In this document: positions 33,730 to 63,074 of the stretch, one piece after another
Position numbering within the stretch: position 1 is the stretch's first letter
How the letters are laid out: every line of letters begins with the position of its first letter
Source: Mobula birostris
Taxonomy: Eukaryota
Assembly (NCBI RefSeq): GCF_030028105.1
Contig: NC_092384.1
Location: forward strand, 3,329,665 to 3,393,664
Direction of reading: 5' to 3'
DNA length: 64,000 nucleotides
Translations under genes and position numbers: made by a program
Notes under the pieces: model-generated
Told to the model about the DNA's origin: nothing
The model's input: the letters and a program-made list of their open reading frames with translations, nothing else
The model's database searches: none

Positions 33730-35794
33730 TGTGACGAGAATACACATAAAATCAAGATGTTTGCTGGCTTGGGTTAGCATCAGTGGCATCAGCAGTTGGT
33801 CTGCCATCTGTCCTCAGGGGAAGGAGAGATAAGGAACAATGGAGCAGCGTCTGGAGATGTGTAATGAAGGGACGGGAGAGAGAGCTGTCTGGAGCGGCTC
33901 CCCCTTTGAACCCTGAACTGTCTGAAGTGATGGACAGGCGATACCCCAGCAGGGGGATAAAAAGGGATAGGTTCGCTAAGGGACACACACGACACCCGAG
34001 GTAACGAGACCCTGGAAGTGGTGCGCCTCTCACGAGTCGGTGGGAAGTACCGGACCTTAAACGCACAGGGTGGAAAGATACGATCAGCGGGAACCTGGTG
34101 TGTGTCCACCCTCGCTTGGGTGCCGGGTTCACTGCAGAGGATGGATCGCATCAGGAGGAGGGGTCACAGTCGGTGACCTCAGGTGACATCACAAAGGACC
34201 TGCCCGAAAGCTGCTTGTGAGCCATATCGCCGGTCTGTGAGTCGAAGCCGTTCTGAATGATCAGTCGTTCCCGTTCTCTCTCTCTCTCTCCCCCCACGTT
34301 GTCCATCGCCATGGCAACGATTACTGCGAACTGAACTACTAAATTGGACTGAACTTTGTGTCACCTTGAAATTGGTCATTTACCCCTAGACAACGATAGA
34401 GCTTGATTGGTGCTGTTATCTTAATTCTGTGCACATGTGTGTTTATCATTGCTGAATTGTTGCATTTATTATCCTTTCCATTACTGTGTTGCTGTTTCTT
34501 TAATAAAACTTTCTTAGTTCTAGTAATCCAAACTCCAACTGAGTGATCCATTTCTGCTGGTTTGGCAATCCAGTTACGCGGTAAGTAGCATAAGTGGAGT
34601 TCTCGTCCGCGATTTTGAACGCTAAATTTGGGACGGAGTAAATTGATTGGGTTAAAATTCCCGAAAGAAAGAAAAGACAAACAGCAGAAATGGAGGCTGA
34701 GGAATTTATAAAGGCACCGACCTTGGAGGCATTAGAGGATGCCAGGAAATCGGAATTGGTAGCTGTGGCCAAACGGTTGAATCTTGCTAAGGTGAAGTCG
34801 ACAATGAGGAGAGAGGAGATACACAGAGCTATCGTAGAGCACTATGTATCTAAAGGTGTGTTTCCCCAAGGCGAGCTGGGGGTGGTGCCTATTGAAAAAC
34901 CTGCTGGGGACGCGGTACAGGTGCAGCTTGAAAAACTGAGACTCGAGCATGAGTTCCGGGTATGACAGTTGGAGCGAGAAAAGAAAGAGAGNNNNNNNNN
35001 NNNNNNNNNNNNNNNNNNNNNNNNNNNNNNNNNNNNNNNNNNNNNNNNNNNNNNNNNNNNNNNNNNNNNNNNNNNNNNNNNNNNNNNNNNNNNNNNNNNN
35101 NNNNNNNNNNNNNNNNNNNNNNNNNNNNNNNNNNNNNNNNNNGAAGAGAAAGAGAAGGACAGACAGTTGGAGAGAGAGGAGAAACAGAGGGAAAGGGAAT
35201 TCGAATTGGAGAAGTTAAGGTTAAGGGCCGATCAGGGGCTCTTGCCGAACCAAGGTGGAGGGTTCCGGGCGACCCAGGAGGTTAGGCTGGTTCCCCCATT
35301 TGACGATACCGACGTGGATCGGTACTTTCTCCACTTCGAAAAAGTGACTATAAGTAAGGAATGGCTGAGGGATAAGTGGGCTGTGTTACTTCAGAGTGTA
35401 CTGAACGGGAAAGCCCAAGAAGCTTACTCCGCTTTGTCCGCGGAAGATGCCCAGAGGTATGAGGTGCTAAAAGAGGTCATCCTCAGGATTTATGAGTTGG
35501 TCCCGGAGGCATACCGGCAGAGATTCCGGAATGCGAGGACGTAGTGGGACCGCACGTATTTGGAGTTTGGCCGTGAGATGCAGACATATTGTGAGCGTTG
35601 GTGCGCCTCAAAGGGGGTAGAGGGGGATTATGACAGACTGCTACAACTTATCCTGATTGAGCAGTTTAAAGGTTGTGCTCCTGAGGGTATGAGACCCTAC
35701 CTCGATGAGAAAGAGGCAGCCACGTTAGCCGCAACTGCTAAGTTAGCGTATGAGTATCCGTTGACGCATAAAATGAAGTTTGCCCCGAGTAAAG
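33730..35794 (+). mobile_element. Gmr1-like Ty3/Gypsy 5' LTR, PBS and SCAN-domain gag, truncated
   Basis: LTR TGTGACGAG at 33730 to about 34590. Degenerate tRNA-Pro PBS TGGAGTTCTCGTCCGCGAT at 34595-34613. Gag from 34690 with VPPFDDTDVDRYFLHFE and SCAN-like YELVPEAYRQRFR...LILIEQF. Confidence 0.85.
34992..35142. other. Run of N (assembly gap or mask) in the gag coiled-coil repeat
   Basis: N bases flanked by GAGAGA/GAAGAG-rich EREK-coding repeats. Confidence 0.98.
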
Positions 35795-38700: not shown

Positions 38701-41700
38701 ACAGTAATGTGACCTGCGACCCAGTGACGAGTATGGATTTTGCATCTGTCCTCTCTATCCGTATCGACACGCTGGATCGGGGTCCCACCAATCCTTCTGG
38801 GACTGGGTCTCTTACGTATTTTCCCGACGACTGTAGTCAGTTCCCTCACTGAGTCTCCTCTACGTTTCCCGACCCCTCTTCCTGCTGGGATACCCATGGG
38901 CTGACCTTTCGAGGGGCTCCCTGCCGTTCACATTACGCCTGAAGTGTCCCTCTTACCCGCAGTTATAGCACACGCCTCGCCTCGCGAGACCCCGGCTTCC
39001 ACCTGGCCTCAGTTCTGTCTGTCCCGCCAGGGAGGGGCCTTCTTTGCTAGTCCCCTCCCGCGGAGAGACTCCTTTTGCTATCTCCTGCGAGGAGCTGGCT
39101 ACGGTCATTTCACCACCAGGAGCTACTACCGAGGACTGCACGGTATTAACGAAACCCTCTTCTGCTGCCAATGCGTCCGCCTCCTCGGTTACCTCTCTGA
39201 GCAACTGAACAAAACACGGAGAGGGTCGGGGGTGGCGGGGAAAGCGGCCTACGGGATTGCCGGAGGCTCTTAGCGATCGTATCATGCCTCTGCGCTCCCC
39301 TGGCGACCTGGTCGATACTTATCCGATCCACCTCATTCGCTTGAATGACACCCCCACCCCCACCCCCGCACCCCCGACCCGGCGCTTCAAGCGATTTAGC
39401 CTTCGCTGAAGCCGGAAAAGATACTCAGGCTTCTCCCCTTTCTCCTTAGGCAGATTCTGAATTCCCCCTAAACGCTCCACCGTAGTCCCCGTTCGCCCCA
39501 AAGCCTCCTCTAATGCTTGTAGACACTCCCTCCAGGAAGCTAAGGGCTAGTTAGTTTTCACGCCTTTTGCCACCTCAGCTACCACCCCTCTCCTGGTTTA
39601 TACTTTTGCGTTAACTGGACGCCGTAACCAACGCAAATGGCCAACGCCCGTGTGAACATTTATACCTCTGCGTTGGTATTATTGCGTTGCTCGGTAATTC
39701 GCAAAACCACGCATGCGCATTCACCTGCCTGAGCAAGGCTTCATGGTCATGGTAGTCTCGAGGTAAACAAGACGCGTCTTTTTTTCGTGTGAAATGTGTC
39801 CTTCATAATTTTGGAGGTTTGTAAAGCTTTATGGAATGCATTGTAGCCAAAGTTCCTTCCCTGCGCTTCAGTCGCCCAATGGGAAGCTATTACAGCATAG
39901 GATGACATGCTATGCTACCAAGCGGACCAATCACAGCTGCTGCAGTTTGCGTTGCTGCAACGGGCGGTTACATTTTGGGAGTGGTGCGCGTCGCAGCAAC
40001 GCAAATTGTCGCGTAGGATTCCTCAACAGCATCTCTAGGAAGAGGTGCAGTTGACGCTTCAGGCCGAAACCCTTCGTCAGGACAAACTGAAGGAAGAGTT
40101 AGTAAGAGATTTGAAAGTGAGAGGGGGAGGGGGAGATCCAAAATGATAGGAGAAGACAGGAGGGCGAGGGATGGAGCCAAGAGCTGGATAGGTAATTGGC
40201 AAAGGAGATATGAGAGGATCATGGGACAGGAGGCCCAGGGAGAAGGAAAAGGGGGGAGGGGGTGGAATCCAGAGAATGGGCAAGAGGTATAGTCAGAGGG
40301 ACAGAGGCAGAAAAAGGAGAGAGAGAGAGAGAGAGAAAGAATGTTAGTACAACAATAAATAACGGATGGGGTACGAGGGGGATGTGGGGCATTAGCAGAA
40401 ATTAGAGAAGTCAATGTTCATGCCATCAGATTAGAGACTGCACAGACGGAATATAAGGTGTTGTTCCTCCAACCTGAGTGTGGCTTCATCTTTACAGGAG
40501 AAGAGGCCGTGGGTAGACATGTGAGAATGGGAATGGGATGTGGAATTAAATTGTGTGACCAGCAACTTTTATGTTTGTTGCTTGAATTTCCAGCATCTGC
40601 AGAATTTCTCTTGTTTGCGTAAGATTTCTTATTTGCATGGAGTAAGGTTTGCGGTGACGCAGAACTTACGGCGACGCGTTGACGCAGAAATATAAATCAG
40701 CCTTCGGAATTTCTCCCAATCTTTGCCGCTTTCCCTCCTCAGAGCACAGCCGCTCACCTAACAACTGAGAGGTATGTTCAATCCATGTTTCATAATAATC
40801 CTCTCCTTCGGGGATGGGAGTCCTTTCTGAGAAAATTCTTAACTTCGAATGCGGTCCCACCGCCCTGGTCACCAGGAAGTTAATGGCTGAGGCCAACTCA
40901 GAGCTCTCCCCACTTCCGTGGGGAAAGAGAACCAATTACATTCTCCAAATCTGACCACTTCCTTCCTTCATCCTTCAAAAACAATTGGACCCGCTCTCTA
41001 AAATCTCCACCCCCAGCGTCGGGCAACTCCTCTGGTGTCGCTTCAGACACTTCCTCCGTGACAGCGGGCTCGCCCCATAGCCCCGCCTCACCTACGTCAC
41101 CGATAGACTGGGGCAGTCCTAATTCCTTGACGTCAGCACCTGTCTGTATCAGCACAAAGGCTGAGTCGCCCGTTTTACCAATCTTTCTGCTTACTATTTC
41201 AACCTTACCGATAGCTCTGACCGTACTCAAACATCGAATCAACACATCGACTGAGGTACGTATATCCACGCCACTTAATATGCAGGCATGATTAACCGGT
41301 TCTTCCTCGATTTCACACCAATGTTCAATCTTATCGACGTCCATCTCTTCTAATTTAAGCCAGGCGACATACATCGTATCCGACAGAATTCAAACTGCGG
41401 ACGAGCAACCCACAGTGTAACGCCTTTGCCCCTAACTGACTCCCGTTGCCTAGGGTGAAACGCCGTCGACCCCGCCAAACAGTGCAAATGCGTTGGTGCG
41501 GATACGGTGTCAGGAACCCAACGATCAGCCACAACGCAAATATCAAAGAATATCCCAAGTGCTAGTAAAGAATTATACTTTATAGGAATTTTTGGTGATG
41601 GGTTAGGAGCAACAACGAAAAGAGAAGACGCCACATAAGTAACTTATCAGTCTTGTGCACATAATATTTTAATACGTTGGAGCTCACGCCTCCGATTCAT

Positions 41701-42056
41701 CCACAACGTCCTTACGAGTCTCCGGCCACAATCCGAACCCCGGAGGTCCGGTACCTGCCGCCCTGGAACCGCTGTCCGTTCCCCGTACGTCCGTCTTCTC
41801 CGCTCGCCTCTTTAAAAAGCCCGCGCTCCTCAGCTCCGTAAACACATACAAGATAGCATAACCACACTTACATTGGCTGGCAAATGAATACAATTTCCAT
41901 TATCGCTAATTATAACCCAGACATGCTGTAACAGAGAACACCTTGCTCAGCAGTTAACAGTACGAGAAGCCATGTTATTATAACACTTCAGGGAAGCCAT
42001 TTTGTGATAAGCAATTAACCTTTAACAGTCCATCTAATATTACTGAGAACCCTGCA
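35790..42056 (-). mobile_element. Ty3/Gypsy element with PNMA-like gag (copy 1), 3'-truncated within integrase
   Basis: 5' LTR 41416-42056 ending GTTACA, degenerate Pro PBS at about 41397-41414. Gag: KLRIFSERTPIPEGEDYYETW. RT: LVYLDDLIIF. RNase H: LHTDPSREGLGAVLYQ. Integrase: LVCMDF..VITDHYTRYAQA. Confidence 0.9.
39592..40704. mobile_element. MITE-like DNA element in gag, itself carrying a Penelope fragment (about 40010-40620)
   Basis: Termini GTTTATACTTTTGCGT and ACGCAGAAATATAAATCAGCCTT are imperfect inverted repeats. The internal GIY-YIG C-terminus and hammerhead-like motif lie on the minus strand. Confidence 0.6.
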
Positions 42057-42228
42057 GATAGAATGCAAAACGTCGTCGATGCTCAGCAGTTTGGATGTCG
42101 TAATCGATTCGCAGCCTACCAACGTCACAACAAAAACGCAGATACGCTGTTGCGTGACACTAAATCAATTTTATGGAACAGATCAATCACTCTTTCAATT
42201 CTATTTACAAATTATATTTCCTTGCATA

Positions 42229-42922
42229 TGTAGCCCCCTGGCCACCCTCAGGGTCGTTCGGCTCGCTGTCGTCTAGGGAAACAGCCTCGGCCCCGCCAAA
42301 CTGGGTAATTCGTTTGTGTGGATGCTGTGTGAGGTACCCCACCCGGCCCAAATAACAGACATTACACCAGATGCAATTAAATGATTTACAGTTTATAGAT
42401 ATTACTGGAACTATATAATTAAAAGAGAGTAAAATATAAAAGGAAAATAAAAGGCGCCACACTTATCAAAGTTCAATCTCTTCGTGCACAAAAACCGTTG
42501 GAGCTCAAGGACCTTCTTCTTCACCCTGTGACCCCCTCGGACCACCTCGACCGGCCGCCTGGGACCAACAACGGTGGTCGACCAGACGCTCCACACGAGT
42601 CCGCCTCCGTCTCCTCGCCGAACGTCCCGCTCGGGGTCCGACCCCGTTAGCGGACTCACAGCACCTGGTCCATCCTCTGTCTCGCTCTCCCGCCTTCTGC
42701 CCCAAAACTCCGCGCATACAGTATCTTCAAATACACCAAAACCATAAAAACTATCCCAATTGGTTAATAGCACCCTCTTATCACCCTCTAAACCACAATA
42801 AGCTGCTAGCGCAAACTTTCTCAGCGTTAAAGCACAACAAAGCCGCATTCCCCAGATTAACATAACAAAATCGCCATTTTAATTAGCTTCCGCAGTAACA
42901 TAAAAATCGAAACCCCCTTACA
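42229..42922 (-). mobile_element. Solo LTR with 4-bp TSD CATA
   Basis: TGTAG...TTACA termini, with CATA at 42225-42228 and 42923-42926. The site is empty in the paralogous copy near 62880. Confidence 0.92.
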
Positions 42923-42928
42923 CATATT

Positions 42929-43020
42929 TTAAGATTCAGTTGTCCTGCGGTTCTGCACACTTGAGTAGTTTATTTCATGGGATGACGTTAATCTGGAAAT
43001 GGACCTGAAGTTCGGCTCTC
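42929..43020 (-). CDS. Predicted terminal exon of the VJ-C1 receptor, encodes an ITIM
   Basis: Acceptor CATTCACTCTGCAG, phase 1. Reads (G)EPNFRSISRLTSSHEINYSSVQNRRTTES*. INYSSV fits I/V/L/SxYxxL/V. The frame and final stop are conserved in the paralog at 62885-62976. Confidence 0.7.
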
Positions 43021-43892
43021 CTGCAGAGTGAATGATTATCCGTCACGTTTTCAGGGACTTAACTAAATTCACAGAACCTTAGAATATCACTCTGAGTGGA
43101 ACTTGGCCATATTGCCCTTACGCATATCTCCAAGACTTGCAATAAACAGCAAGCATAATTCGGCCCAAACAGGCAAATTAATGTTTCGCAAAATTATTGA
43201 ATCATCCTGGAGCGACTGTATGCGGAGACTGAACAGTGTTGCCTTCTGCAGGCCTGGACTGCCTCCAGAAGGCCGCGTAAACTGATTCGAGATGCACGTG
43301 CGCATCCCACGAAAGAAGGTCGTTCCCGAGCAACTTGTGTGCGCGCGTGTGTGTGCCCGTGCATTCTATTTGTGTTCTTGGGGGTTGTGGGGTGGGGTGG
43401 GGTGGGGGGGCGTTGGAGGGTGATGGGTGAGGGAATGTGGTCTTTGGTATCATGCCTTATAGTTTCGCCGAGATATTCAGAACAAAACTGGAATCTCATT
43501 TTAACAGCTTAATTTATATTTTTAATCGTTACAGGCAAGGCGAAGCCGCTAAATAATTAAAATTAATGCAAATTAAGATAAAAAAAAAACGCACGTATGC
43601 ATCCAGAGATAAAAGACACTGACTAAACACTTTACTCGTATTGATACTTTGAGCTCGAAACCTAAGTCAGGCGGGCAATCTGTTTGATATCTCTCCACAA
43701 CGGTCGGAGTAATGAAGAGTACCGATCCACAAAAGGTTACCAGTGAGATTCGGTTATTCGATATGAGTCAGTTCCGGTGGGCTAATGAGCCCAATTTTGA
43801 AGGAGAGTACTCTGCTCAAAAATACGGCTCCGGCTTTCCTGGGGGTTACTGATGGAAATATGCCTGTCACTTCGGTATTTCCGTCTACTTAC

Positions 43893-43913
43893 CTATCCTA
43901 TGATTAGAAAGTC
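43893..43913 (-). CDS. Candidate 21-nt cytoplasmic micro-exon (phase 1-1)
   Basis: Acceptor TTCTGTTTCTGTACTGCAG and donor GTAAGT. Encodes (G)LSNHRI and preserves the frame. Confidence 0.5.
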   Translation of the reverse strand, partial: DFLIIG

Positions 43914-43984
43914 CTGCAGTACAGAAACAGAAGCTTAAGACTTTACCTTCTTAAAATGATACTATCATAGAGAAACTACGGCAT

Positions 43985-44475
43985 AGAATAAATTCCTTTG
44001 TTTCATCCAGTTCATGTCGATGCATTTCTCTGCATTGTCCCATCAACCCACACCCCGGCCATCGCCTTCCAGACCTCTCCCATCCATGGACAATCTCTCA
44101 GAAGTTGTAATTGAACCTGCATCCACCACCTCAGCTGGCAGCTCGTTCCATGCTCACGCCGCAGCCAGAGTAAAGAAGTTCCCCCTCAAGACACCATTTA
44201 TTATTTCACCTTTTATCCTAAACCTAAGACCTCTAGTTCTAGTCCACTCAAACTTAGCGAAAAATGCCTGGTTATATTTACCACTTGTACATTTTTATAC
44301 ATCCATGTTAGCTCCCTTCGAACTGCTACGCTTCCGGGAATGCAGTCCTAAACTTATGAACCCATCCCTCTCACACAAGTCTTCAAGTCAGAGCAACGTC
44401 CTTGTAAATTTTCTCCGCCCTCTTTCAAGCTTAATATGTCTTTTGTGCAGGTGACCAGACTATACACAGTACTCC
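43985..44475 (-). mobile_element. CR1 3' fragment
   Basis: Decayed RT C-terminal region matching other CR1 3' ends in the window. Confidence 0.65.
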
Positions 44476-44934
44476 AAATAATACCTCAGCAATATCTCGT
44501 ACACATTGGCTCGAATTCACTCTGTGTCGGAGTCTTGCAGCTGCCGTACTTCCTGTGTGTTGCCGTCCAAATGGGCAGCGCGAGCTCCCGGAAAGTTCTG
44601 TTTTTCTGGTCAAAACGCCGCCCGATGTGGGGCCGGTGCATGCGCAGATGTGACCATTTTCTTTCCATTTCACGGCTGACGATCCTTGGATGCCGTGGAC
44701 ACATAGTGCTGCTGGAGGCAGGGCCACCAGTAAATGTTTGTTAGCAGTGTAAACGTAAACGTGGACAAAATATAGCGAGGAAGAAGCATCAGATAGTCTA
44801 CTTGGCAAATCATACAGGGCATCGTCTCGTGAAAGCGACACATCGTTTCTCGTCATAGACATTTCGTGGTACAAAGTAACGAAGATTATTTTTTTTCCAG
44901 GCGAAGGGAAAGTCACGATGGCACAACTAATGGC

Positions 44935-45420
44935 AAAACTAAACACTTTAAAATTCAGATATATCGTAGATTTAAAATAATATAAATTATGTATAAAGTA
45001 AAAAATGGACAGCTACCACAAATTATCCAAAGGTTGTTTAAAGTGAGACAAAGTCAACATGATTTGAGAAGAACATGTATATTTCACAAGCAAAGAATGA
45101 GAACAAATGTAAAAAATTGTTGTATTTCAGTCAGAGGGATAAATCTTTGCAACAGTTACAGTGAGAATTTAAAAACATGCACCACATTTAACAAGTTTAA
45201 TAAGTATTTAAACATAATTTAATGAACAAATATTAAATACGTGATTTAACATGAATGGGAGTACTGTAAATAAATGATACTTGGAATTGGATTTCGTGTT
45301 AAAAGATCATGATTTTTTTTGATTTGATATGACGATTGACGCCAAATATGTTGTTGTATAAGCAAGAGGGCGAGGTGTAATAAGCTGTAGCTTCAGCGTA
45401 CACCCTTTCGGTCTGTTTTA
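44935..45420 (+). mobile_element. L2/Crack-like LINE 3' end
   Basis: ORF 44989-45222 YKVKNGQLPQIIQRLF..HDLR..RTNVKNCCISVRGINLCN resembles the C-terminus of L2/Crack-group ORF2. Confidence 0.55.
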
Positions 45421-46659
45421 AAGAATAACTTTTTTTTTGTTGTAATTTTGTCTTATGCAATCATTGTTATGCAATCATCGTTTTTGTTATGTTTGTATGA
45501 CGGAAATAAATTCCATTCATTCATGTATTTTTTTCGAATATTGGGAGATTCTGCTGGAGTCTGTGCCTGTCAATCATTACGTGCTTATCAAACATTTAAT
45601 CACAGTTTATTTAGAAATATACCCACATGTCTATTCCGATGAGAATACACCAGATGCTTAACATAATTGCAAACCGATTCAACCAATTTCTTTCAGTAAT
45701 TGATAAATATCCCAAACTTCCCCCTATTTTGATTAAACATTACAGGTTTTGCTAATTCATTTGTAAAAGAATAACAGAAACGCCCGGAGATATGGAAACC
45801 GCGGGAAGTCCGCCATTCCCTGTATACAACTCTACAAAAGATTCAAACTCCATAATACTGTCCCGCTGAGGTAAGGACTCCTCAATGAGGTCCATTATAG
45901 AAATGTGCCCACTACGTAACCGAATGTCGTGACGCTGTACGCCGTGATTAACCTGTTTCAACCGTGGGGTGGCTCGGTTATTCAGACAATGCATTCCCTG
46001 TATTGCCCTTAGTTTTTATGTTAATTCAGGGCAGCAGCTTTCAACGCGCACTGATCCAATGCGTATAGAAGCTCGTTTGCTGTCTCGCGAGTCTGCGTAG
46101 GCGAAGATATTAAATTCGTCTACATTTAATGTCTTTCTTCTGAAGAATAGCAGCGCTGTTTAAACACGACAACAAGCGGAAAAAAGTGAAAGATCGACGC
46201 TGTTGGTTATACAGCTTAGTAAATGAGATAGTTATTATTGTCCATTAGTTGATCTGTTAATGAAAACAGGGAATGCTGGTACGGAGAGATTAGGCAGGGT
46301 CTCTGGAATGATTGTTTTGGGATTAGATCAGACCCGTGTGTAATACTGTACGATCAAGAGTAAAATACAGTACAGGCACACTATAACTGCTAACAACCTC
46401 AACTGTGCAGATTTACAGAGGAACTTTAAGGTCAAAGTTCATAGCTTCTTGATAGTGGCTGCACAGGTTGATAAGGTGGCATAGAAGGGACAGAATGGAC
46501 AATTCTGCTTTGATTTCTCTGGAACAGTGGAGGCTGAAACCTAATAGACGTTTATAATATTCTGAGAGTGGTCAAGCAGCATCGGTTTTCTAAAGATGCA
46601 ACATCCGAAACTAGATGGTATGCAATTCAGGTAAGAAAGGTTAAGTTGACAAAAGATAC

Positions 46660-46865
46660 GAGAAGCAACACACACAAAATGCTGGTGGAACGCAGCAGGC
46701 CAGGCAGCATGTATCGGAGGAAGTACCGTCGACGTATTGGGCCGAGACCCCTCGTCCTGACGTCGAATGTACTTCTAACTATAAATGCTGCCTGGCCTGC
46801 TGCGTTCCACCAGCATTTTTTGTGGGCTACTGGCATTTCCAGCAACTGCAGATTTCCTCGTGTAT
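46660..46865. mobile_element. Penelope-derived hairpin element (copy 1 of a duplicated pair)
   Basis: Inverted arms with a collapsed centre CTCGTCCTGACGTCGA. The same collapse is seen at 63075-63285. Confidence 0.8.
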
Positions 46866-47873
46866 TGAGAATGAAGTTCGTTTTCACACAGATTATTGGG
46901 TGATTGGAATGCCCTGCCGGAGGTGCTGATATAGAGAGATACTTGAAGCTTTAAGATAAGCAAGTAAATATGCTGAGAACAGAGGAATAAGGACATTGCG
47001 CAGACAGAAAGGATCTCCTTAGTTAGACCTCTAACTACTAGTTTTGTTAGTTTTGCACAATATCAGTGGCAAAATAGTATGTTCTGTGTTTTACAGTTCC
47101 ATATTCCGTGTTTATGATCGATATTCTATCGAACCAAGTGACATAATCTAAAGAGATCATTTGGAATCAGAATGGAACGAATTACTGGACAGACGGTGAT
47201 TTTGTACAGACGTAAAATCACTGGAGCTGCAGAACAATCAGCCTGAAGAGACATTATGAAAACCAGTTAACCTAGCAATAAATGAAACGATTTTTCCGAA
47301 CAAGTACAACAGCCAACGAGCGATGGTTTCTATTATACGATATATGATATAAGCTGCGGTCGGAAAACTTATGTAGAGGATAAACAGGGAGGCTGATGTG
47401 AAGAATTAAATGATATAGTTCGGTTTTGGTTGAATTGAGTCCGATGTTCTGGGACAGTCTCCCAAGCTATTCCCAGTTGTGCCACATCTTCGAAAGTCTT
47501 TCTCGCAGGAATGAGGATTCCGGAGCTTGTGTTGACGTTGGGGTTTTTATGGGATGGTGTCGCAAGCCCCATGTCCACTCTTCCTCCTTTCACAGCCGGG
47601 TTTGGTACCGTCCATGGCCGAGTCATTCCAACGGAACCGCTGCACAATTGAACACCAACAAAACAATGTCTTAGTTGCACACTCAAAGGGGTACGGGTCG
47701 GAAACAGTAACGGAACAATAAAGATACACGTTCTCATCATAAAAAAGAAAGGTGGAGACGGACACCACTGAAATGGGTGATCGGGTGGAATATTGCGAAT
47801 AATCTGCTAGACTATCCGCAACACACGTTAAGGAAAGGGTAAGCGTTTCGGGGAGAACGTGAGAGAATGTTAC

Positions 47874-47979
47874 CGAAATGTTGGAAGTCACATTTGTTGA
47901 TTGTCTGAATTAATTGTTTTTCTTCGTCCGAGGAAGGACTCGGCGTGATTTGACCAAGTGATTAGAAATCACGACTAAG
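47874..47979 (-). CDS. Candidate first cytoplasmic exon (phase 0-1) with an in-frame stop
   Basis: Branch-like CTGAC, acceptor TTCATTTTCTATAG and donor GTAACA. Reads LSRDF*SLGQITPSPSSDEEKQLIQTINKCDFQHF with TAA at 47962-47964. Its phases bridge the TM exon and the phase-1 downstream exons. Confidence 0.4.
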
Positions 47980-48613
47980 CTATAGAAAATGAATACGGTC
48001 AGGTTAACTGCTCTCATGAGTGCAAAATCGGAGAGCTACAATGACGTTGATCGGCAGAGGAACCGAAAAGATTCTAGTAAATAAACCGAAAGGAGTAGTG
48101 GAAACGGCATAGTTTGAGGAAAGGGCAAAGGGCAAAGTAACGGGACGGTCTAGATCGCTTTTCCACACAGGCTGCATGAATTCAATGGTCCGAATGCCCG
48201 CCCTCTTCGATTTCTGTCGTGTTTTGGTGAAATATCGATTAGAGTTGTTGAAATATATTTCCATTAAACAGGCCGAATAGACTGGAACGATGGAGTGGAG
48301 TGCTGGACATGCTAATCGAGTCTCACTACAGTATTATTATATCACTGCTCTTTTGCATACAGAACTCTTTTATTCCTGCTGTTTAACTCCAGAGTCAATA
48401 TGCAAATAGGGAAAGTTCGAATGTCTTGAAATTCGAAAGATCGACCCAGAATAAACAGAAATAATCATCAAAGCGGACAATTTGGATTAATGTTGCGTGG
48501 TGCACAAACCATTGGAGACTTTTCTGTGCTTTGACTCCCACAAATTATAGCGTATCATTTTTATTTAATTATCTTCAAAATTGACCTAAGCTATAATAAA
48601 AAGGAACTATTAC

Positions 48614-48699
48614 CTTTACTTTCAAAAGCAATATTCCAAAAAACAGAAATACGAATCCGAACCAAACACATCGGGAAAACAGCAAGGTTTTGTCTCCAT
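48614..48699 (-). CDS. Transmembrane exon of the VJ-C1 receptor
   Basis: Acceptor TATATCCTTTATTCTAG, phase 1 matching the C1 exon. Reads DGDKTLLFSRCVWFGFVFLFFGILLLKVK. Donor GTAATA. Confidence 0.72.
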
Positions 48700-49859
48700 C
48701 TAGAATAAAGGATATAATAAGGAAGTGAATGCCCAAACTATTACCAATCAGTATAGCACTAAAGTGTTGTTTTCTTAAAGCGTAAGGAATGAACCTTAAT
48801 TCCAATAGAAGTTTGACAATTATAGAATTGCAACGTGTTCAGATACAATTGCAATGTCTAAAGATATTGTGACAGACACTTGGGCAGATAAGGTGGATAA
48901 GGTGCAGAGAGCTGTGAGACTAATGTAGATAAATTGAATTTGCTTAGTTAGACAGCACGGCCAAGGGTCTTGAAAGGACGCTGGATGAGTCCAGTATTTT
49001 ATTTTATTTCTGCGTTTAATTCTAATCAGCATCTTGTTCATAGCCTGAAGTTATTTGCATGTTTGGATCATGACTAGAGCAGATGAATGCTCAGTAAGCA
49101 TAATTAAATGAAACAGGAAACAGCAAACATATATACCTGGATTAAAATCTGCCGAGGTGCCAAACTGAATAATTAGGAAATAAGTGTAAAATACACCCCA
49201 TTGGTTCGGTAATGACAAGTACAGGAACGGCAGCACACTACCTCATATGGATTTGGAGAATTTTAATTTCGTGGACAGATAAAAAGGATAGTAATCGTTC
49301 ATAACAGGCGTTTAATATGATTGAACTGCTTTCCAGAAGAAAGGAAGTGATCCAGAAAGAAGTTCAATGCATAAACGGAGTTCCAAATGTTTCTGACAAG
49401 TACCACACGCGAAATTGATCATTGTTCCGTGCTGCAAAGAGTATCAAATTACCACTGTGCTTACAACCCACTAAACATTCCAATTGTTTCTGTGTTCGAG
49501 TTGCTGAGAGTAATGAAGGTTCTCTAAAGAAGAAAAGATCAACATAAGCTTCAAGTGCGTAGAAATTCCAATTCGGAGCGATGTTCATCTGCTTTATAAA
49601 TGACATAGATATTCACAGGAGGCAAAGGTCGAGGTTGGCAGACCAAAAAGATAGGTTATTCTGCCATGCAGCATAGTAGAAGAAATTGAACAGTCTGGGA
49701 AAATATGCGCATACGCGACGGATAGAATGAATCCATATGAATGTAGGGGAGATTGTACATAAAAACGATATTACCGGGAACCTGGAGAATCTGCTCTGAC
49801 AGCTGTGCCTTCGACAAGGGCATCAAGCATTGTTTGGACTAAACTGAAAGATGTCCGGT

Positions 49860-50420
49860 TTAATTGACATATCCAAACCTTGTAAATGCCAAAGAGCACG
49901 GAGTCTGAACTAAGAAATGGGGGAATATACGAATGAATGGCTGTTTACAGTTAGCTACATAGTCTAGGCCATATCGGCGTTCGATTTTATTAACATAAAA
50001 GCCAGGAGCTTAAAGATTACAACTGCAGGAATTTAAGTTGGAATGGAGAAATATAGTGCTAGATAACTGACGGAGAAAATCGTTGATCATATGGGATACG
50101 ATGCGGCTGTACTCAAAGGGCTCCAGAATGTAACGTTAAAATCAGTGATTATGTACAAATATATTAGCCAAATTTTAACTAATGTCGTTGAATACTCGTA
50201 TTTTATATAGTTAACACGGACAGCTACGATTAATACTGTATTTCTATTTAAGAAGCATTGTACAAAGGACAATTTCGCAGTCGCAAGTTCGCATCAACTG
50301 AATCGTTTTTAAAGCAACTACCCACACAACGAAAGTCTACCCGGTTCCGTTTCCAGCCAGTGTGCCCTGATGAGCGATGGTACAATAATAGACTTCCACA
50401 TCTTGCCAATTAAAGACCAT
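49860..50420 (-). pseudogene. Partial duplicate of the V-exon 3' end, intron 2 and the C1 acceptor, lying inside intron 3
   Basis: About 49910-50406 aligns to about 51150-51660. It encodes VYYCTIAHQGTLAGNGTG*TFVVW with TCG>TAG and a 1-nt shift at the donor. The acceptor CCCATTTCTTAG is retained. Confidence 0.85.
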
Positions 50421-50845
50421 CTATGTCCTCCGAACATTAAATCACCAGATTTTGCTTCTTTTCTCGTCTTGTGGCGCCTTTAGCATCTGTCTATTCTCAA
50501 CCTAACACGGATGGAAAGCACAGGGTTCCGGCTGGATTCCAGCCTGGGATCATCTCCTCGAGGTGGCACCACATCACCGGCCGGCAACGCCAGTGTGTCT
50601 TAGATTTAATATATTATACACATCGGAGAAATCGTGAGGATAAGTCTCTCAAGACGCGAAACGCATTGCATCTTATGCTGGAGAAAACAGCTTCTATACA
50701 AATTATAAAAAGCTAATTTTGTATGTATTTAATAAGAACCTATTAGTGGCCACAGGGAAATCTAGCGAAAACGATTAAATATGATCGTTTAAAAATGGCT
50801 TATAGTTACCCGACCTTTTATGATAGTTGAGATTCATAGTCTCAC

Positions 50846-51148
50846 CTGTGCTGTAGTTGGTGACGATGTAAGTGGCTAGAGCAGGATCCCGGAGGGTGAC
50901 GTGAGATACCAGACAAGTGTAGACTGTCCCGGTTGGCACAACCTCTGTCACTGATAATCTGCTGGAAGCTCCATATAGCCCATCCGAAGTGGAGTTGGTA
51001 ACAGTCGAACCGGTTGTAATTTTGATGCCATCTTTATACCAGGTGAAACTGATATCCATTGGGTAAAAGGGAGATGTAGTGCACAGAAGAACCAAAGCTT
51101 CCGATTTCTCTAGATCTCCGGAGTAAATTTTCAATGGAATTGGAGGAA
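50846..51148 (-). CDS. Ig C1-set domain exon
   Basis: Acceptor CTATTTCTTAG, donor GTGAGA, phase 1-1, 303 nt. Motifs [21 protein letters not shown] and YTCLVSH are C1-set signatures. Confidence 0.92.
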
Positions 51149-51575
51149 CTAAGAAATAGTGGAATAGATCGATGAATGGCTGTTTACGGTTAGCTGTATA
51201 TTCCCGGCAATATCACCGTTCGATACTATTAACATAAAAGCCAAAATATTAAGATTACAGCGGCAGGAATTTCAGTGGCAATGGAGGAAAATAGTTTTGG
51301 ATAACTAACGGAGCAAATCGTTGATCATATGGGATCAGTGGCGGCTGTACTTTAAATTTCCGCAAATCAAAGAGCTCCAGAATTTAACGTTCAAATGAAT
51401 AATTATGTACAAATACATTAGCCATATTTTAATTAATGTCGTTGAATACTCTTGTTTTATATAGTCAACGCGTGCCGCTACGATTAGTACCGTTATTCTA
51501 TTTAAAAGGCTTTATACAAAAGACAATCACTCAGTCGTAATTTCGCATGAACTGAATCGCTTCTAATGCACCTAC

Positions 51576-51896
51576 CCAACACAACTAGGGTCGACCCGGT
51601 TCCGTTGCCAATCATTGTGCCCTGATGGGCGATGGTACAATAATAGACTCCCGCATCTTGTGGACTCACGTTGACTATCTGCAGGAAGCCGCTGAATTTA
51701 GTACTGAAGCCGGTCAATACTCTGGCGTCATGGTCTGGGTTGATGTAATTATTTTCACCCTTTTTCCACCAATATATGTCAACGCGGGGACCCTCCAGAA
51801 AGGAGGAAAGGGAACAGTCAAAGGAAATGTTTTCACCCTTCATGATGTTGGCGATTTTAGGGAGTTGTGTTACGTCGACAGAAGATTCAACTGACC
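51576..51896 (-). CDS. Ig V-set exon with germline-joined J-like segment
   Basis: Acceptor CTTTCTTTAATTTAG, donor GTAGGT, phase 1-1, 321 nt. Carries VTQ, FDC, YWWKK, QDAGVYYC and GNGTGSTLVV. Confidence 0.93.
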
Positions 51897-52031
51897 CTAA
51901 ATTAAAGAAAGGCAATTCCGAGTCAGTAAGAGACACTATAAACAGTGTATACAATTGTAAAGACGAGCAAGGACAAACATAACGAGATATTCAATAACTG
52001 TTTCATTCTGAAGAAAGGGAAAGCCATTTAC

Positions 52032-52086
52032 CCGTAAAATATATCATCCAAAGAAGCAGACAGTGATGTCCCACGCTGGCCAACAT
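52032..52086 (-). CDS. Signal-peptide (leader) exon
   Basis: ATG at 52086, MLASVGHHCLLLWMIYFT(G), donor GTAAAT, phase 1. A 135-nt intron separates it from the V exon. Confidence 0.8.
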
Positions 52087-56757: not shown

Positions 56758-59700
56758 CAACTCCTAAGCTCTTTACAGCTCTTTCCTTATATCAGACACA
56801 TACTTCAGCTAAGACTTCGGCGATGCCTCACCCGCATCCGTCCCGACACAAATGTCAATGGGCAACCTTGCCTCGCGCCCAAACATAAGGTAATAGGGCG
56901 AGTAACCAGTAGCTTCATTGCGTGTTCAGATGTAACAGTGAACCAGATGCCCAATGTGTCGACTCCAACGATTCTTCTTGCTGATCTCCAGAGTCCAGAG
57001 CATGCCTAGCAGCGTCCGATTAAACCTTTTCCGGCTGGGGATCGCCCTGCGGATGATAGGGCGTGGTCCTCGATTTCTCAATCCTCAGCATGCTCAGTAA
57101 CTGATAGCTGAGCTTACTCTCAAAGTCCCATCCCTGGTCACTATGAATCCACCGGGGAAGGCCATAATGCAGAGAATACTGCTCCCATAGCACTTTTGCC
57201 ACCGTAGTCGCCCTCTGATCCTTGGTCAGAAAAGCTTGAGCATACCTGGTGTAGTGGTCCGTGATGACGAAGCCATTCCCCGTGTTGCTGGCATCGGGTT
57301 CTATGGCCCGCAAATCCATACACACCAGGTCCAAAGCGACCGCACTGTGCAAGTGGGACAAAGGGGCAACGTGCTCGGGCACCATCTTCCGCCATATGCA
57401 ACGAATGGAGGACTTACAGTACTCTTCAACCTCCGTCCGCGTTCGGGACCGGTAAAACAGATCCTTGAGCAATCTATAGGTCTTTTCCACGACCAAATCT
57501 CCAGAGTCATCATGGAGGGATTTCAACACAACCTTTCGACACTTCTCGGGCAGGACCAGCTGACAAAACCGAACTCGGTCCGGGGGTGACGTTACCCAGT
57601 ATAACATGTCATTATTCAAACTCAACCGAAGCCATTCTCTCAGTAACCGAGACACTGACCATGCTTAGCCTTCTCAGCCCGTGTCACATCCTTCTCTTCC
57701 ACTGCATGCCAGACAGGGCCTGTGCCCGGGTCATCTCGCTGAGCAGCGGCCACTTCCCCAGGGTTTAACCGAGGCAGCTGCGTGGCATTCAGAGCAGTCA
57801 GGTCACAGTAAACTAGAGACGGGGCGTCATCGGACGCTCCAATGGGTCAACTGCTCGATCTGGCCTCTCCTTCTCCTCAGCATGCACGGTGCTAGCAAAC
57901 TGACATATGGCCTTCACCCCGGATGCATTATCGCTCTCCCACTCCTCGTACTTCTCCAGCTCCTCATGTCCCCGTCGGGACAGGGCATCCGCGTCGACAT
58001 TCCGGCTCCCCGGCCGCTACTTCAGGTTGAAATCATATACAGACAGGGCTGCCAGCCACCGATGGCCTGTGGCATCCAATTTCGTCGAGGATAGGATGTA
58101 GGTGACCGGTTGTTGTCTGTCCTCACCTCAAACTTGGCCGCGTAGAATCAGTCATTCAGTTTATCCACCCCACCCATTTCAACGCCAGGAGCTCCAAACT
58201 CTGAGTGGGATAGGTTCTCTCCGAGGGTGACAAACTCCGGCTGACAAACGTTACAGGCCTCAGGCCAGCGCCCTGATCCTGGTATAAAACGGCCCCTAAC
58301 CCCTCATGGCGGGCGTCAGTGTGTACGACACATGGCAATCGTGGGTCTACAAAAGCCAGTATCGACGCCTGAGTCAGCATTTCCTTCTGTGACTGGAAAA
58401 CCGCTTCATATTGGTCATCCGATCTCTGTCCGAAGTACTCTGAAGGGTTCAAATATTCTCCCACCTCCCGTCCTTTCCTCCCTTTCCCCTCTGTCCCAGG
58501 GGAGAGTAACCACGCAGAAGCTCGTTCAAGGGATGACTCATCTTGGCGTAGCCCTTCATGAATATCCAATAGTATCCACAGAATTTCAGGAACGAGCGCA
58601 GACCACTCATGGTCTGGGGCCTCGGCCTGGTAGTCACCGCTTCGATCTTAGCCGGGTTTCTGGCTACTCCATCCGCGAGATGATTTGTCCAACATATCCA
58701 ACAGACGTCTGGCAGAACAGGCAGAACGTGTCCAGTGAAGGTTTTAACAATTCCTGCTTCAGCCTGTCGAGTAGCTTCATTACTCTCGCTTCGTGTTCTT
58801 CCAAGCTGGATCCAAATATTATGAGGTCAGCCAAACATACTAGCACTTCGAGCAGCTTCATATCCCCCACTGCCTTCTCTATTAACCCACTGGAAAGTGG
58901 CAGGGGCCCCCAATTTGTCCTGGGGCATCCTTTCGAACTGGTAAAATTCCAGAGGGCATATGAAGGCCGTCTTCTCCTTATCGGCCTCACTCATCGGGAT
59001 CTACTAATACCCACTCCTCAAATCCAACACGCAATACCACTTCGCCACACTCAGACAGGCAAGCGCGTCTTCGACCCGGGGGACCGTGTACTGATCAGGA
59101 ACCGTGCGCCAGTTCACTGTGCTATAGTCCATACACATACGAACCTTCCCATTCTTCTTCCGGGCCACTACGATAGGGGAAACATAAGGACTTCTGAACT
59201 CCGTGATGATCCTAGCCTCCTTCAACTTACGAAGATGCTGCCACACGTCTTCCACATCTGCAGGGGCCAGTCGCCGTGATCGTTCCCTAAACGGAGTATA
59301 CTCAGTCACCCGTATGGTGTGGCGAGTGTCTCCTGGAACAACCCACATCAAACTCGTCAAAGGAAAAAAAAACATCTGTTATCGTCAACATCTTCTCCAC
59401 CAGCCTCCGCTTCCAACCCTCCGGCACAGGTGATGCTCCAAAGTTAAAAGCTTCAGCGGTTAACGTAGGCCTTTTTCCCGACAGCTCTGCCCCAACTGGC
59501 CTCACGGGGGCCCTATGCATCACCGTAACCGGGAACAAATGCGTCAGAGACATTCCTCGCTTAAAGGTGACCTCCCGTGCAGTAGTGTTCCTGCCGATCA
59601 CCACTAGCCTGCGTGCCTGTATCACCGAGGGCTTGTGCAACTCGGGGCTCAGCAGCAGCCCAGCAGGAAATCTCGACACCCCCTCGAGATCTACCGGGGT

Positions 59701-62700: not shown

Positions 62701-62710
62701 GACGCCTACA
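56757..62710 (-). mobile_element. Ty3/Gypsy element with PNMA-like gag (copy 2), 3'-truncated
   Basis: 5' LTR 62081-62710. Integrase ORF 57020-57655 (HHCC, LVCMDL, IHSDQG, TTPYHPQGD). RT ORF 59004-59375. Same upstream flank as copy 1. Confidence 0.92.
61597..61634 (+). ncRNA. Minimal type I hammerhead ribozyme motif in a Penelope-like 3' end
   Basis: TAGTC-CTGACGA-AGG(GTCTCAG)CCT-GAAA-CGTC-GAGTG has an intact core and a palindromic ACGT stem III. Stem I has one mismatch. Confidence 0.65.
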
Positions 62711-62884
62711 GAAAGAATGCCAAATGACGTCACTGCTTAGCAGTTTGGATGTCGTACTCGATTCGCAGCCTACCAAAGTCACAACAAAAACGAAGATACA
62801 CTGTTGCGTGACACTAAATCAATTTTATGGAACTGATCAATCAGTCTTTCAAGTCTATTTACAAATTAGATTTCCTTGCCCATT

Positions 62885-62976
62885 TTAGGATTCAGTTGTC
62901 CTGTGGTTATATAGACTTGATTAGTTTATTTCATGGGATGACATTAACCTGGGAATGGACCTGAAATTCGGCTCTC
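62885..62976 (-). pseudogene. Paralogous terminal exon with the ITIM tyrosine converted to stop
   Basis: Identical acceptor. Reads EPNFRSIPRLMSSHEIN*SSLYNHRTTES* with TAA at 62921-62923. It differs from 42929-43020 at 11 of 92 nt. Confidence 0.72.
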
Positions 62977-63074
62977 CTGCAGAGTGAATGATGTACCGTC
63001 ACGTGTTCAGGAACTTGGCTGAATTCACAGCACCTTAGGTAAGAAAGGGTAAGTTGAAAAAAAGATACAAGAAT

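What the first reader, a model, noticed from the sequence alone, without database searches (positions are those of the whole stretch)
42929..52086. Non-rearranging VJ-C1-TM-ITIM immune receptor gene hidden among repeats
Seen in sequence: phase-compatible exons with canonical GT-AG sites give leader, V, C1 and TM (255 codons), plus candidate tail exons ending in INYSSV. The V exon runs straight from YYC into a J-like GxGSTLVV strand, with no intervening RSS seen. Established: single-exon VJ domains paired with C1 are the architecture of SIRP-type receptors and resemble NKp30-type V domains. Such genes are discussed as relatives of the pre-RAG antigen-receptor ancestor. Inference: this is a chondrichthyan lineage-expanded NK/myeloid receptor family member. 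The ORF track alone misses its TM and ITIM exons.
Basis: partly seen in the sequence, partly recalled or inferred. Interest (0 to 1): 0.85.

Follow-up and report, generated by a model that had tools for sequence, protein, structure and literature searches.

The report
Ray SIRP-like receptor gene, activating-type copy
This is a real, intact ray gene for a non-rearranging, antibody-shaped (V plus C1) surface receptor of the SIRP type, but this copy most likely makes a short tail with no inhibitory motif and carries an arginine in its membrane anchor, so it looks like the "on-switch" partner of inhibitory sister genes.

Summary
Homologues match at E 1e-44 to 1e-66.

The gene belongs to a large family found only in cartilaginous fish among the clusters I sampled. 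Databases auto-name its members "SIRP-alpha-like", "Ig lambda-like" or "tapasin-related". Its nearest outside relatives are SIRPs, and its inhibitory members carry the SIRP-alpha four-tyrosine tail.

The ITIM claim is not supported for this copy.
- After the TM exon, homology to a stingray model points to a fifth exon (47639-47547) that ends in a stop. That gives a 285-aa protein with a 30-residue tail and no tyrosine.
- The INYSSV exon (43020-42929) comes into frame only through a donor site no better than background.
- No listed RNA run holds that exon, and its neighbouring paralogous copy has a stop at the tyrosine.

The TM helix carries Arg236. The outer domains are 83-90% identical to a Mobula ITIM-bearing paralogue, but the TM and tail are unrelated to it. 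That is the pattern of a paired receptor, like SIRP-beta.

I saw no transcript of this copy. The scan has already flagged sister VJ-C1 genes elsewhere in this genome.

The parts
52032..52086 (-). Exon 1: start codon (52086-52084) and most of the signal peptide, 55 nt. The donor is ACG|GTAAAT. This is a split leader followed by a phase-1 intron.
   Evidence: It is 16/18 identical to the leader of Mobula hypostoma P0001.
51576..51896 (-). Exon 2: V-set domain with a germline-joined J-like G strand (..DAGVYYC..GNGTGSTLVVL), 321 nt. The acceptor is tttag| and the donor TTG|GTAGGT.
   Evidence: Pfam V-set 1.1e-8 and ig 2.7e-9. It is 90% identical to P0001 and 88% to P0002. No RSS was found. The donor is joined to the C1 acceptor in an RNA contig of a paralogue.
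50846..51148 (-). Exon 3: C1-set domain, 303 nt, with Cys148, Trp162, Cys204 and the YxCxVxH signature (VYTCLVSH).
   Evidence: Pfam C1-set 4.1e-13. PDB hits are UrIg2, IgA1 CH1, IgM and SIRP-alpha D2. It is 83% identical to P0001 and 76% to P0002.
48614..48699 (-). Exon 4: stalk plus transmembrane helix (..DKTLLFSRCVWFGFVFLFFGILLLKVK) with Arg236 inside the hydrophobic stretch, 86 nt. The donor is AAG|GTAATA and the exon ends in phase 0.
   Evidence: It is 76% identical to the TM of Hemitrygon P0002 and 21% to the TM of the ITIM form P0001. The Arg aligns with the Arg of short-tailed shark members. The AlphaFold model has a helix at 227-262. No RNA coverage was seen.
47547..47639 (-). Exon 5 (best-supported 3' coding exon): a 30-residue cytoplasmic tail, RFRWNDSAMDGTKPGCERRKSGHGACDTIP, then TAA. 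It has no tyrosine.
   Evidence: tblastn of P0002 residues 248-279 gives E 2.4e-14. It is 26/30 identical with the same stop position. The acceptor is tgtgcag|. The 40 nt visible in the neighbouring paralogous unit differ at 1 base and keep the stop. Part of it, 47541-47625, also matches abundant repeat-like contigs.
42929..43020 (-). INYSSV exon: an open frame GEPNFRSISRLTSSHEINYSSVQNRRTTES* behind a good acceptor (ctctgcag|). It is probably a relic of the ancestral inhibitory terminal exon. It is in frame only through a poor donor at 47609.
   Evidence: A similar C-terminal INYHSVQ or INYTDV occurs in shark family members P0024 and P0034. The shuffle test is only suggestive. The paralogous copy has TAC>TAA. 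No listed RNA run holds it.
48560..48613 (-). Alternative 3' end if the exon-4 donor is not used: read-through gives ..KVKVIVPFYYSLGQF*, with the stop at 48577-48575. ATTAAA (48569-48564) and AATAAA (48565-48560) follow directly.
   Evidence: ORF 48575-48805. No AATAAA or ATTAAA lies within 650 nt after the exon-5 stop.
49907..50405 (-). Dead partial duplicate inside the C1-TM intron: the 3' third of a V exon (..YYCTIAHQGTLAGNGTG*TFVVW, with a stop in the J-like strand) plus a copy of the V-C1 intron. It ends exactly at the C1 acceptor.
   Evidence: 81% identical to 51146-51660. The sequence is and the tblastn hits.
42926..43082 (.). Block shared with the neighbouring paralogous unit (62882-63038, 88% identical). 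It holds the INYSSV exon and about 60 nt of upstream intron. In this unit it is flanked by insertions specific to the unit, at 42226-42925 and 43083-46628.

Best explanation
The gene is an intact five-exon, non-rearranging gene on the minus strand (52086-47547). It encodes a 285-aa type I membrane glycoprotein with these parts:
- a signal peptide;
- a V domain with a built-in J-like strand;
- one C1-set domain;
- a transmembrane helix carrying Arg236;
- a 30-residue cytoplasmic tail with no tyrosine.

It is one copy in a tandem cluster of a multigene family that spans cartilaginous fish. That family is the cartilaginous-fish counterpart of the SIRP family.

Inhibitory members of the family have an uncharged TM and a SIRP-alpha-like four-tyrosine (ITIM) tail. 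This copy shares their outer domains but has a different TM and tail module, like SIRP-beta next to SIRP-alpha.

The likely mechanism is that it binds the same or a similar ligand as its inhibitory sisters and signals in the opposite direction. It would do so by pairing the membrane arginine with an acidic residue of an ITAM adaptor of the DAP12, FcR-gamma or CD3-zeta type. The INYSSV exon 4.5 kb downstream would be a leftover of the ancestral inhibitory tail.

Shown: exon structure, domain identity, family membership, the mosaic similarity pattern, and the absence of RSS. Inferred: use of exon 5 in this species, adaptor pairing, the ligand, the expressing cell type, and that this copy is expressed at all.
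For: Gene structure:
- Exons and phases are, and Pfam V-set and C1-set. There is no RSS in the window.
- All 22 residues invariant in the 23-sequence family alignment are kept.

Mosaic similarity:
- Against the Mobula hypostoma ITIM form P0001: leader 89%, V 90%, C1 83%, but TM 21% and tail 13%.
- Against the Hemitrygon short form P0002: V 88%, C1 76%, TM 76%, tail 87%, with the same stop.

Membrane arginine:
- Arg236 aligns with the arginine of a short-tailed shark lineage (P0017, P0020-22, P0025; tails of 3-15 residues).

SIRP relationship:
- In the tree, the gene sits in a clade (SH-aLRT 98) with P0001 and P0002, nested in ray-shark-chimaera order.
- Of 10 sampled non-chondrichthyan top hits of the profile search, 8 are SIRPs.
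- The tail of Heptranchias P0028 aligns with the bat SIRP-alpha tail motif by motif, E 2e-6.
- The AlphaFold model (pLDDT 79) superposes best as a two-domain unit on rat and mouse SIRP-alpha D1-D2: TM-score 0.56-0.58, rmsd 4.1-4.2 A, 26-29% identity.

Against the ITIM route.
Against: - No RNA contig of this exact copy was found. In four runs, including the window's own species (a 100% identical contig at 46319-46508), the V and C1 contigs are only 90-95% alike, so they come from paralogues.
- No protein 90% or more identical exists in the 5.8-billion-protein collection, so the gene has no public model.
- Use of exon 5 rests on one computer-predicted stingray model.
- No polyadenylation hexamer follows the exon-5 stop within 650 nt, whereas two follow a read-through stop right after the TM exon.
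- Part of exon 5 matches a repeat-like element in transcriptomes.
- The arginine lies near the outer end of the helix, and some family members have a basic residue just outside the membrane at a nearby position.
- Adaptor pairing is analogy only.
Confidence: 0.6

Rival explanations
1. One reading: an inhibitory receptor whose tail ends in the ITIM INYSSV. It would be made by cutting exon 5 short at 47609 (31 nt, phase 1) and splicing to 43020-42929, giving 295 aa. With Arg236 it would be a hybrid receptor with both a charged TM and an ITIM.
For: - The route is in frame and open.
- The INYSSV exon has a good acceptor that is conserved in the paralogous unit.
- INYHSVQ, INYTDV and LNYSEV end the tails of shark family members.
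- The summed similarity to family C-termini is exceeded in only 16 of 1000 shuffles.
- The window copy keeps the I-N-Y-x-x-V-Q core that the paralogous copy has lost.
Against: - The donor ACG|GTACCA scores -2.8 bits, no better than 23% of all GTs in the region.
- No other single intermediate exon passes modest splice and frame filters.
- No protein in the 5.8-billion collection has this tail.
- No listed RNA run holds the exon.
- The paralogous copy has a stop at the tyrosine, and the two copies differ by 11 of 92 nt, mostly amino-acid-changing, the same rate as the flanks.
- The best single similarity is reached by 105 of 1000 shuffles.
- 3.5 kb of unit-specific insertion now separates it from exon 5.
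Confidence: 0.12
2. A silent or decaying duplicate: the frame is still open because the duplication is recent, but the copy is not expressed. It sits among transposon insertions next to expressed paralogues.
For: - No transcript of this copy was found in four runs, while paralogues are seen. One of those is itself a transcript with a stop at codon 101.
- There is no public gene model.
- The gene contains a dead V fragment in intron 3 and insertions in the 3' region.
- The window is mostly retroelement debris.
Against: - The frame is intact over five exons, with all canonical splice sites and all family-invariant residues.
- The TM and tail module is conserved with a different ray genus at 76-87%.
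- The runs are few, small, of unknown tissue and kept only as contigs, so absence is weak evidence.
Confidence: 0.2
3. The same gene, but the TM exon is the last coding exon. The donor at 48613 is not used, the tail is the 15 residues KVKVIVPFYYSLGQF, and the transcript ends at the AATAAA at 48565-48560.
For: ATTAAA and AATAAA lie 6-15 nt after the read-through stop, and there is none within 650 nt after exon 5. Shark short-tailed members have tails of 3-19 residues.
Against: The stingray model splices to the exon-5 homologue, and that tail is 87% conserved with an identical stop position, better than the TM or C1. Such hexamers occur about once per 700 nt in this AT-rich DNA.
Confidence: 0.08

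Closest known systems
SIRP family (SIRP-alpha/SHPS-1 and SIRP-beta) of bony vertebrates
   Same: - An N-terminal V domain with a J-like strand encoded in one exon, followed by C1-set domain(s) and a single TM.
- The family occurs as pairs: an ITIM-tailed inhibitory form, and a short-tailed form with a basic residue in the membrane.
- Inhibitory cartilaginous-fish members share the SIRP-alpha order of four tyrosine motifs.
- SIRPs are the nearest outside relatives by profile search and by two-domain structural superposition.
   Different: - It has one C1 domain instead of two.
- It has Arg, not Lys, in the membrane.
- Its tail is 30 residues, against about 6 in SIRP-beta (from my own knowledge).
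- Identity to SIRP D1-D2 is only 26-29%, and Ig light chains score about as well.
- Orthology, synteny and CD47 binding are untested.
UrIg / UrIg2 (non-rearranging shark antibody-like genes; PMC12227049)
   Same: A split leader, a single-exon VJ domain without RSS, and C1-set domains, in elasmobranchs. UrIg2 (9dmx) is the top PDB sequence hit of the C1 exon.
   Different: UrIg has three C domains and is secreted. UrIg2 has nine to eleven C domains and no paired ITIM and charged-TM forms (PMC12227049). The high UrIg2 score is summed over its three C domains. Per domain, IgA CH1 and IgM score as well.
NKp30 / NCR3
   Same: A germline-joined V domain, a G strand of the G-x-G-T-G-x-G-T type (from my own knowledge of the human sequence), and an arginine in the TM that recruits an ITAM adaptor.
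   Different: NKp30 has no C1 domain, and no NKp30 appeared among the hits I examined.
Ig light chains and TCR chains
   Same: The V-J-C1 layout and sequence similarity: light chains score 85-90 bits against the family profile. Hence the automatic name 'Ig lambda-1 light chain-like'.
   Different: V and J are one uninterrupted exon, there is no RSS in 64 kb, the protein has its own TM exon, and the predicted V-C1 elbow differs (rmsd about 9 A to light chains, 4 A to SIRP-alpha).

Membership tests
SIRP family (as a homologue) | N-terminal V-set domain with a J-like G strand encoded together in one exon | tested here: met
   Exon 51896-51576. No RSS.
SIRP family (as a homologue) | Two membrane-proximal C1-set domains (V-C1-C1) | tested here: not met
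   There is only one C1 exon. tblastn and ORF scans find no second C1 between 50846 and 48699, only a dead V fragment.
SIRP family (as a homologue) | Closest relatives outside the lineage are SIRPs | tested here: met
   8 of 10 sampled non-chondrichthyan top hits are SIRPs. V-C1 scores 72-91 bits. Ig light chains score similarly, and no tree against Ig or TCR was built.
SIRP-alpha type (inhibitory) | Cytoplasmic tail with ITIM-type tyrosine motifs | tested here: not met
   The best-supported tail has no tyrosine. This feature is met in family members P0001, P0028 and P0029 but not in this copy. The INYSSV exon is reachable only through a background-level donor.
SIRP-beta type (activating partner) | Basic residue within the TM helix, a short signalling-motif-free tail, and an ectodomain close to that of an inhibitory paralogue | tested here: met
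   Arg236 lies in a 21-residue hydrophobic stretch. The tail has 30 residues and no Tyr. V is 90% and C1 83% identical to ITIM form P0001, with TM 21%.
SIRP-beta type (activating partner) | Association with DAP12 or another ITAM adaptor | not testable with these tools
   This needs co-expression and co-precipitation.
SIRP family (as a homologue) | Conserved synteny with the SIRP cluster, and binding of CD47 | not tested
   The window holds no other cellular gene. Homologue loci could not be fetched.
Rearranging Ig/TCR genes | Separate V and J segments flanked by RSS | tested here: not met
   V and J are contiguous in one exon. There are zero RSS-like sites in the window.
UrIg / UrIg2 | VJ followed by three or more C1 domains, in a secreted or very long TM form | tested here: not met
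   One C1 domain, then the TM exon. Definition from PMC12227049.
C1-set Ig domain | PF07654 match above threshold and the [FY]xCx[VA]xH signature | tested here: met
   49.9 bits against a cut-off of 21. VYTCLVSH is at residues 201-208.
PRARP (Fu et al. 2019) | Family definition (paper not held) | not testable with these tools
   The paper could not be read. It is only cited in PMC10751288 and PMC11599192 as a VJ-type gene.

The most novel reading that the evidence does not exclude
One gene makes both kinds of receptor. Alternative use of the weak donor inside exon 5 would switch the Arg-TM receptor between an ITIM-less tail and an INYSSV (ITIM) tail, so a single locus could deliver activating or inhibitory signals. 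More broadly, the SIRP-alpha/SIRP-beta paired system, in a two-domain V-C1 form shaped like an antigen-receptor chain, would already have existed in the common ancestor of jawed vertebrates.
Probability: 0.1. Interest if true: 0.6.

Novelty: new member of a known kind. Interest (0 to 1): 0.4.

Why it matters
SIRP-type receptors are one of the few non-rearranging gene families built like an antigen-receptor chain (VJ plus C1). For that reason they are discussed as relatives of the gene that the RAG transposon split.

Cartilaginous fish turn out to have a large clustered family of such genes, with two notable features. Its inhibitory members carry SIRP-alpha-type inhibitory tails. It has also repeatedly produced partners with a charged TM and a short tail. 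Together these place the paired SIRP system at the base of jawed vertebrates.

The family also gives a natural set of inhibitory and activating pairs to study. I found no paper describing it in the library I could search, and its members carry four or five conflicting automatic names.

This particular copy is useful mainly as an example of how an inhibitory gene is turned into an activating-type one. It has a new TM and tail module, a stranded ITIM exon and retained outer domains.

Tried and rejected
- **RNA evidence.** I made two run searches and two read layings, which is the cap. No run holds this exact copy. The only junction seen (V-C1) comes from a paralogue.
- **Stingray locus.** The fetch failed because the file was too large, so I could not compare exon 5 or the INYSSV exon at the DNA level between species.
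- **Search for the ITIM tail.** Searching the 5.8-billion-protein collection with the ITIM-tailed isoform, restricted to TM plus tail, gave nothing at E 10 or below.
- **Intermediate exon.** Enumerating single exons between the TM and INYSSV exons (length 1 mod 3, open frame, decent sites) gave none.
- **Other ITIM frames.** A scan for other ITIM-like frames between 48.6 and 42.8 kb found only INYSSV in a hydrophilic context.
- **Homology of the INYSSV exon.** The shuffle test was inconclusive: 105/1000 for the best hit and 16/1000 for the top-five sum.
- **Constraint on exon 5.** Identity along the duplicated 3' segment shows no clear peak over exon 5, of which only 40 nt are visible.
- **Rfam.** Nothing was found in the window. 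Pfam found nothing in the ORFs overlapping exon 5.
- **Literature.** Searches for PRARP, SIRP with shark or elasmobranch, and VJ-C1 in cartilaginous fish found no description of this family. The UrIg 2023 and PRARP 2019 papers are not held.
- **UrIg-like reading.** I rejected it. The UrIg2 hit is inflated by its three C domains, and the domain count does not fit.

Full report
**What is in the sequence**

On the minus strand there is an ATG at 52086.
- leader, 52086-52032;
- V, 51896-51576;
- C1, 51148-50846;
- TM, 48699-48614.

All introns are GT-AG. The introns around the Ig exons are phase 1, and the four exons total 765 nt, or 255 codons.

The V exon reads straight from DAGVYYC into GNGTGSTLVVL and then into a donor site. 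A scan of the whole 64-kb window, both strands, found no RSS-like site. The criteria were a CAC heptamer with at most 1 mismatch, a 12 or 23 (±1) spacer, and a nonamer with at most 2 mismatches.

Pfam calls the V exon V-set/ig (about 1e-8 to 1e-9) and the next exon C1-set (4e-13). The C1 exon carries the YxCxVxH signature. Ray and shark proteins hit each exon by tblastn at E 1e-44 to 1e-66. The core observation is therefore real and far beyond chance.

The closest protein with the same membrane anchor is a RefSeq model from the stingray Hemitrygon akajei (P0002, 279 aa). After the TM it continues into LFRWNDSAMDGTKPGCERRRSGHRASDTIP and stops.

That tail maps to window 47639-47547, behind a good acceptor, and ends in TAA at the same position. 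Spliced this way the gene gives 285 aa, with a 30-residue tail that has no tyrosine.

This tail is 87% identical between the two ray genera. That is as conserved as V (88%) and better than C1 (76%) or TM (76%), which argues that it is coding.

The INYSSV frame (43020-42929) is real and has a good acceptor, but it needs a phase-1 partner, whereas the TM exon ends in phase 0.
- The only in-frame route I found cuts exon 5 at ACG|GTACCA (47609). On a simple donor matrix, with frequencies taken from memory, this scores -2.8 bits. The four used donors score 2.4-6.9, and 23% of all GTs in the region score as well.
- No single intermediate exon passes modest filters.
- No protein in the 5.8-billion collection has such a tail.
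- No listed RNA run holds the exon.

A third possibility is that the TM donor is not used. The frame then stops after 15 residues at 48577-48575, and ATTAAA and AATAAA follow directly. No such hexamer follows exon 5 within 650 nt. This option, like exon 5, gives a tail without an ITIM.

**The INYSSV exon is probably a relic**

A segmental duplication links this unit to the next one in the cluster:
- 41028-42225 matches 61694-62879;
- 42926-43082 matches 62882-63038;
- 46629-47586 matches 63037-64000.

All three blocks are 88-90% identical.

In the other unit the three blocks are contiguous. Here they are separated by insertions of 0.7 and 3.5 kb.

The paralogous copy of the exon reads ..SSHEIN* (TAC>TAA). 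The two copies differ at 11 of 92 bases, mostly amino-acid-changing, which is the same rate as the flanks.

More distant shark members of the family end their tails in ..VVYTNINYHSVQDQL..RNINYTDVTF or ..LNYSEV... The exon therefore looks like the ancestral terminal ITIM exon. A shuffle test is only suggestive: 16/1000 for the top-five sum and 105/1000 for the best hit.

**What family it is**

The first search found 31 relatives, all cartilaginous fish. Their automatic names include:
- tyrosine-protein phosphatase non-receptor type substrate 1-like;
- Ig lambda-1 light chain-like;
- tapasin-related protein-like;
- NCR3 ligand 1-like.

A profile search added Callorhinchus members.

An exhaustive profile search of 1.84 billion representatives gave 236 proteins at E 1e-30 or below. 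All ten full-length clusters sampled from 372 down to 178 bits are chondrichthyan, and within each species the members lie on one chromosome-sized contig.

Eight of ten sampled non-chondrichthyan hits at 145-170 bits are SIRPs, from coelacanth, lungfish, birds, turtle and bat. Their V-C1 (D1-D2) unit scores 72-91 bits against the family profile. Antibody light chains in the PDB score about the same, 85-90 bits.

Two results go beyond general Ig similarity.
- The cytoplasmic tail of an inhibitory member (Heptranchias P0028) aligns with bat SIRP-alpha motif by motif at E 2e-6. The paired motifs are YAALDM with YADLNL, TVYAQ with TEYAS, LTYASIDM with LTYADLDM, and TEYAQL with SEYASV.
- The AlphaFold model (pLDDT 79; V, C1 and a TM helix at 227-262) superposes as a two-domain unit best on rat and mouse SIRP-alpha D1-D2. 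TM-score is 0.56-0.58, rmsd 4.1-4.2 A and identity 26-29%. Light chains fit only at about 9 A rmsd.

I therefore read the family as the cartilaginous-fish SIRP counterpart, with one C1 domain instead of two.

**What this copy is**

In a maximum-likelihood tree of ectodomains, the window gene sits in a clade (SH-aLRT 98) with Mobula hypostoma P0001 and Hemitrygon P0002. Skates are sister to that clade, sharks lie outside, and Callorhinchus is basal.

| Compared with | Leader | V | C1 | TM | Tail |
|---|---|---|---|---|---|
| ITIM-tailed P0001 (Mobula hypostoma) | 89% | 90% | 83% | 21% | 13% |
| Short-tailed P0002 (Hemitrygon akajei) | not comparable (P0002's N-terminus differs) | 88% | 76% | 76% | 87% |

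The TM reads LLFSRCVWFGFVFLFFGILLL. Its Arg236 replaces Ser or Ala of the inhibitory forms. It aligns with the arginine of a separate short-tailed shark lineage (..IPRFVLGFLVILIL.., tails of 3-15 residues).

A shared ectodomain with a swapped TM and tail, a basic residue in the membrane and no signalling tyrosine is the signature of the activating partner in paired receptor families such as SIRP-beta, activating KIR and PILR-beta. That comparison is established knowledge, and the adaptor step is inference.

**Expression and integrity**

The frame is intact, and every residue invariant in the 23-sequence alignment is kept. However, I found no transcript of this copy.

Run X3 holds a 100% identical contig at 46319-46508, so it is the same species. 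Its V and C1 contigs are only 90-95% alike. One of them carries a stop at codon 101 and so comes from an expressed pseudogene paralogue. The V-C1 junction (51576/51148) is seen only in such a paralogue contig.

No protein 90% or more identical is in the public collection. A silent copy therefore cannot be excluded.

**Context**

The rest of the window is retroelement debris, including an integrase at 57020-57655 and a LINE endonuclease at 24120-24779. There is no other cellular gene, so linkage to the MHC could not be checked.

Earlier notes of this scan name the genome as giant manta and report further VJ-C1 genes just beyond both ends of the window and on other pieces. Of those notes, I tested only the TAC>TAA change.

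**Verdict**

The gene is real and the architecture is right. The SIRP-type reading is right and is now better founded. The ITIM is probably not part of this copy's product.

This is a new member of a known kind of receptor. It belongs to a family that is predicted in databases, and no paper describing the family turned up in the library I could search.

Noticed in passing
window 49907-50405 (minus strand): A dead partial duplicate of the V exon's 3' third plus the whole V-C1 intron lies inside the C1-TM intron. It is 81% identical to the original, has a stop in the J-like strand (GNGTG*TF), and ends exactly at the C1 acceptor. It looks like the remains of a V-C1-V-C1 arrangement or of an unequal crossover.
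   Followed up: partly
window 41028-42225, 42926-43082, 46629-47586 versus 61694-64000: This is a segmental duplication with the next gene unit, 88-90% identical. This unit carries two unit-specific insertions (42226-42925 and 43083-46628). The paralogous INYSSV exon at about 62,9xx has TAC>TAA at the tyrosine.
   Followed up: yes
window 46631-46829: A short element with an internal inverted repeat (46671-46824 matches its own reverse complement at 81%). In all four sequencing runs, contigs matching it sum to depths of 15,000-108,000. It is probably a very abundant SINE-like repeat, and a copy lies at 63086-63239.
   Followed up: no
window 47541-47625 (inside exon 5): Many contigs of moderate to high depth in all four runs match 36-85 nt here at 85-95%. 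Their flanks are unrelated, and some show tandem 36-nt units. Most of the tail exon may therefore derive from a repeated element, yet the tail is conserved with a stingray. This is unexplained.
   Followed up: partly
window 51593-51754 (RNA contigs of run X3): Two different paralogue transcripts cover the V exon at 93-97% identity. One has a stop at the codon equivalent to Gly101, so it comes from an expressed pseudogene in the same cluster. All paralogue contigs have Glu/Lys78 and Arg96 where this copy has Val78 and Ser96.
   Followed up: partly
window 57020-57655 (-), 24120-24779 (+): Retroelement remains: an integrase core with its zinc-binding domain, and a LINE-type endonuclease. Several places in the window (about 25977-26120, 7051-7203, 5202-5348 and 32833-33333) match residues 77-127 of the Heterodontus RefSeq model P0018. 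That model's N-terminal extension is therefore probably transposon-derived.
   Followed up: no
window 34992-35142: A run of 151 N (assembly gap or mask). I left it as it is.
   Followed up: no
family alignment A1 (P0003, P0017-P0022, P0025, P0049): Short-tailed forms with a basic residue in the TM have arisen in at least three separate branches of the family: skates, a broad shark lineage, and the stingray/manta branch. Conversion from inhibitory to activating type therefore seems to be recurrent.
   Followed up: partly
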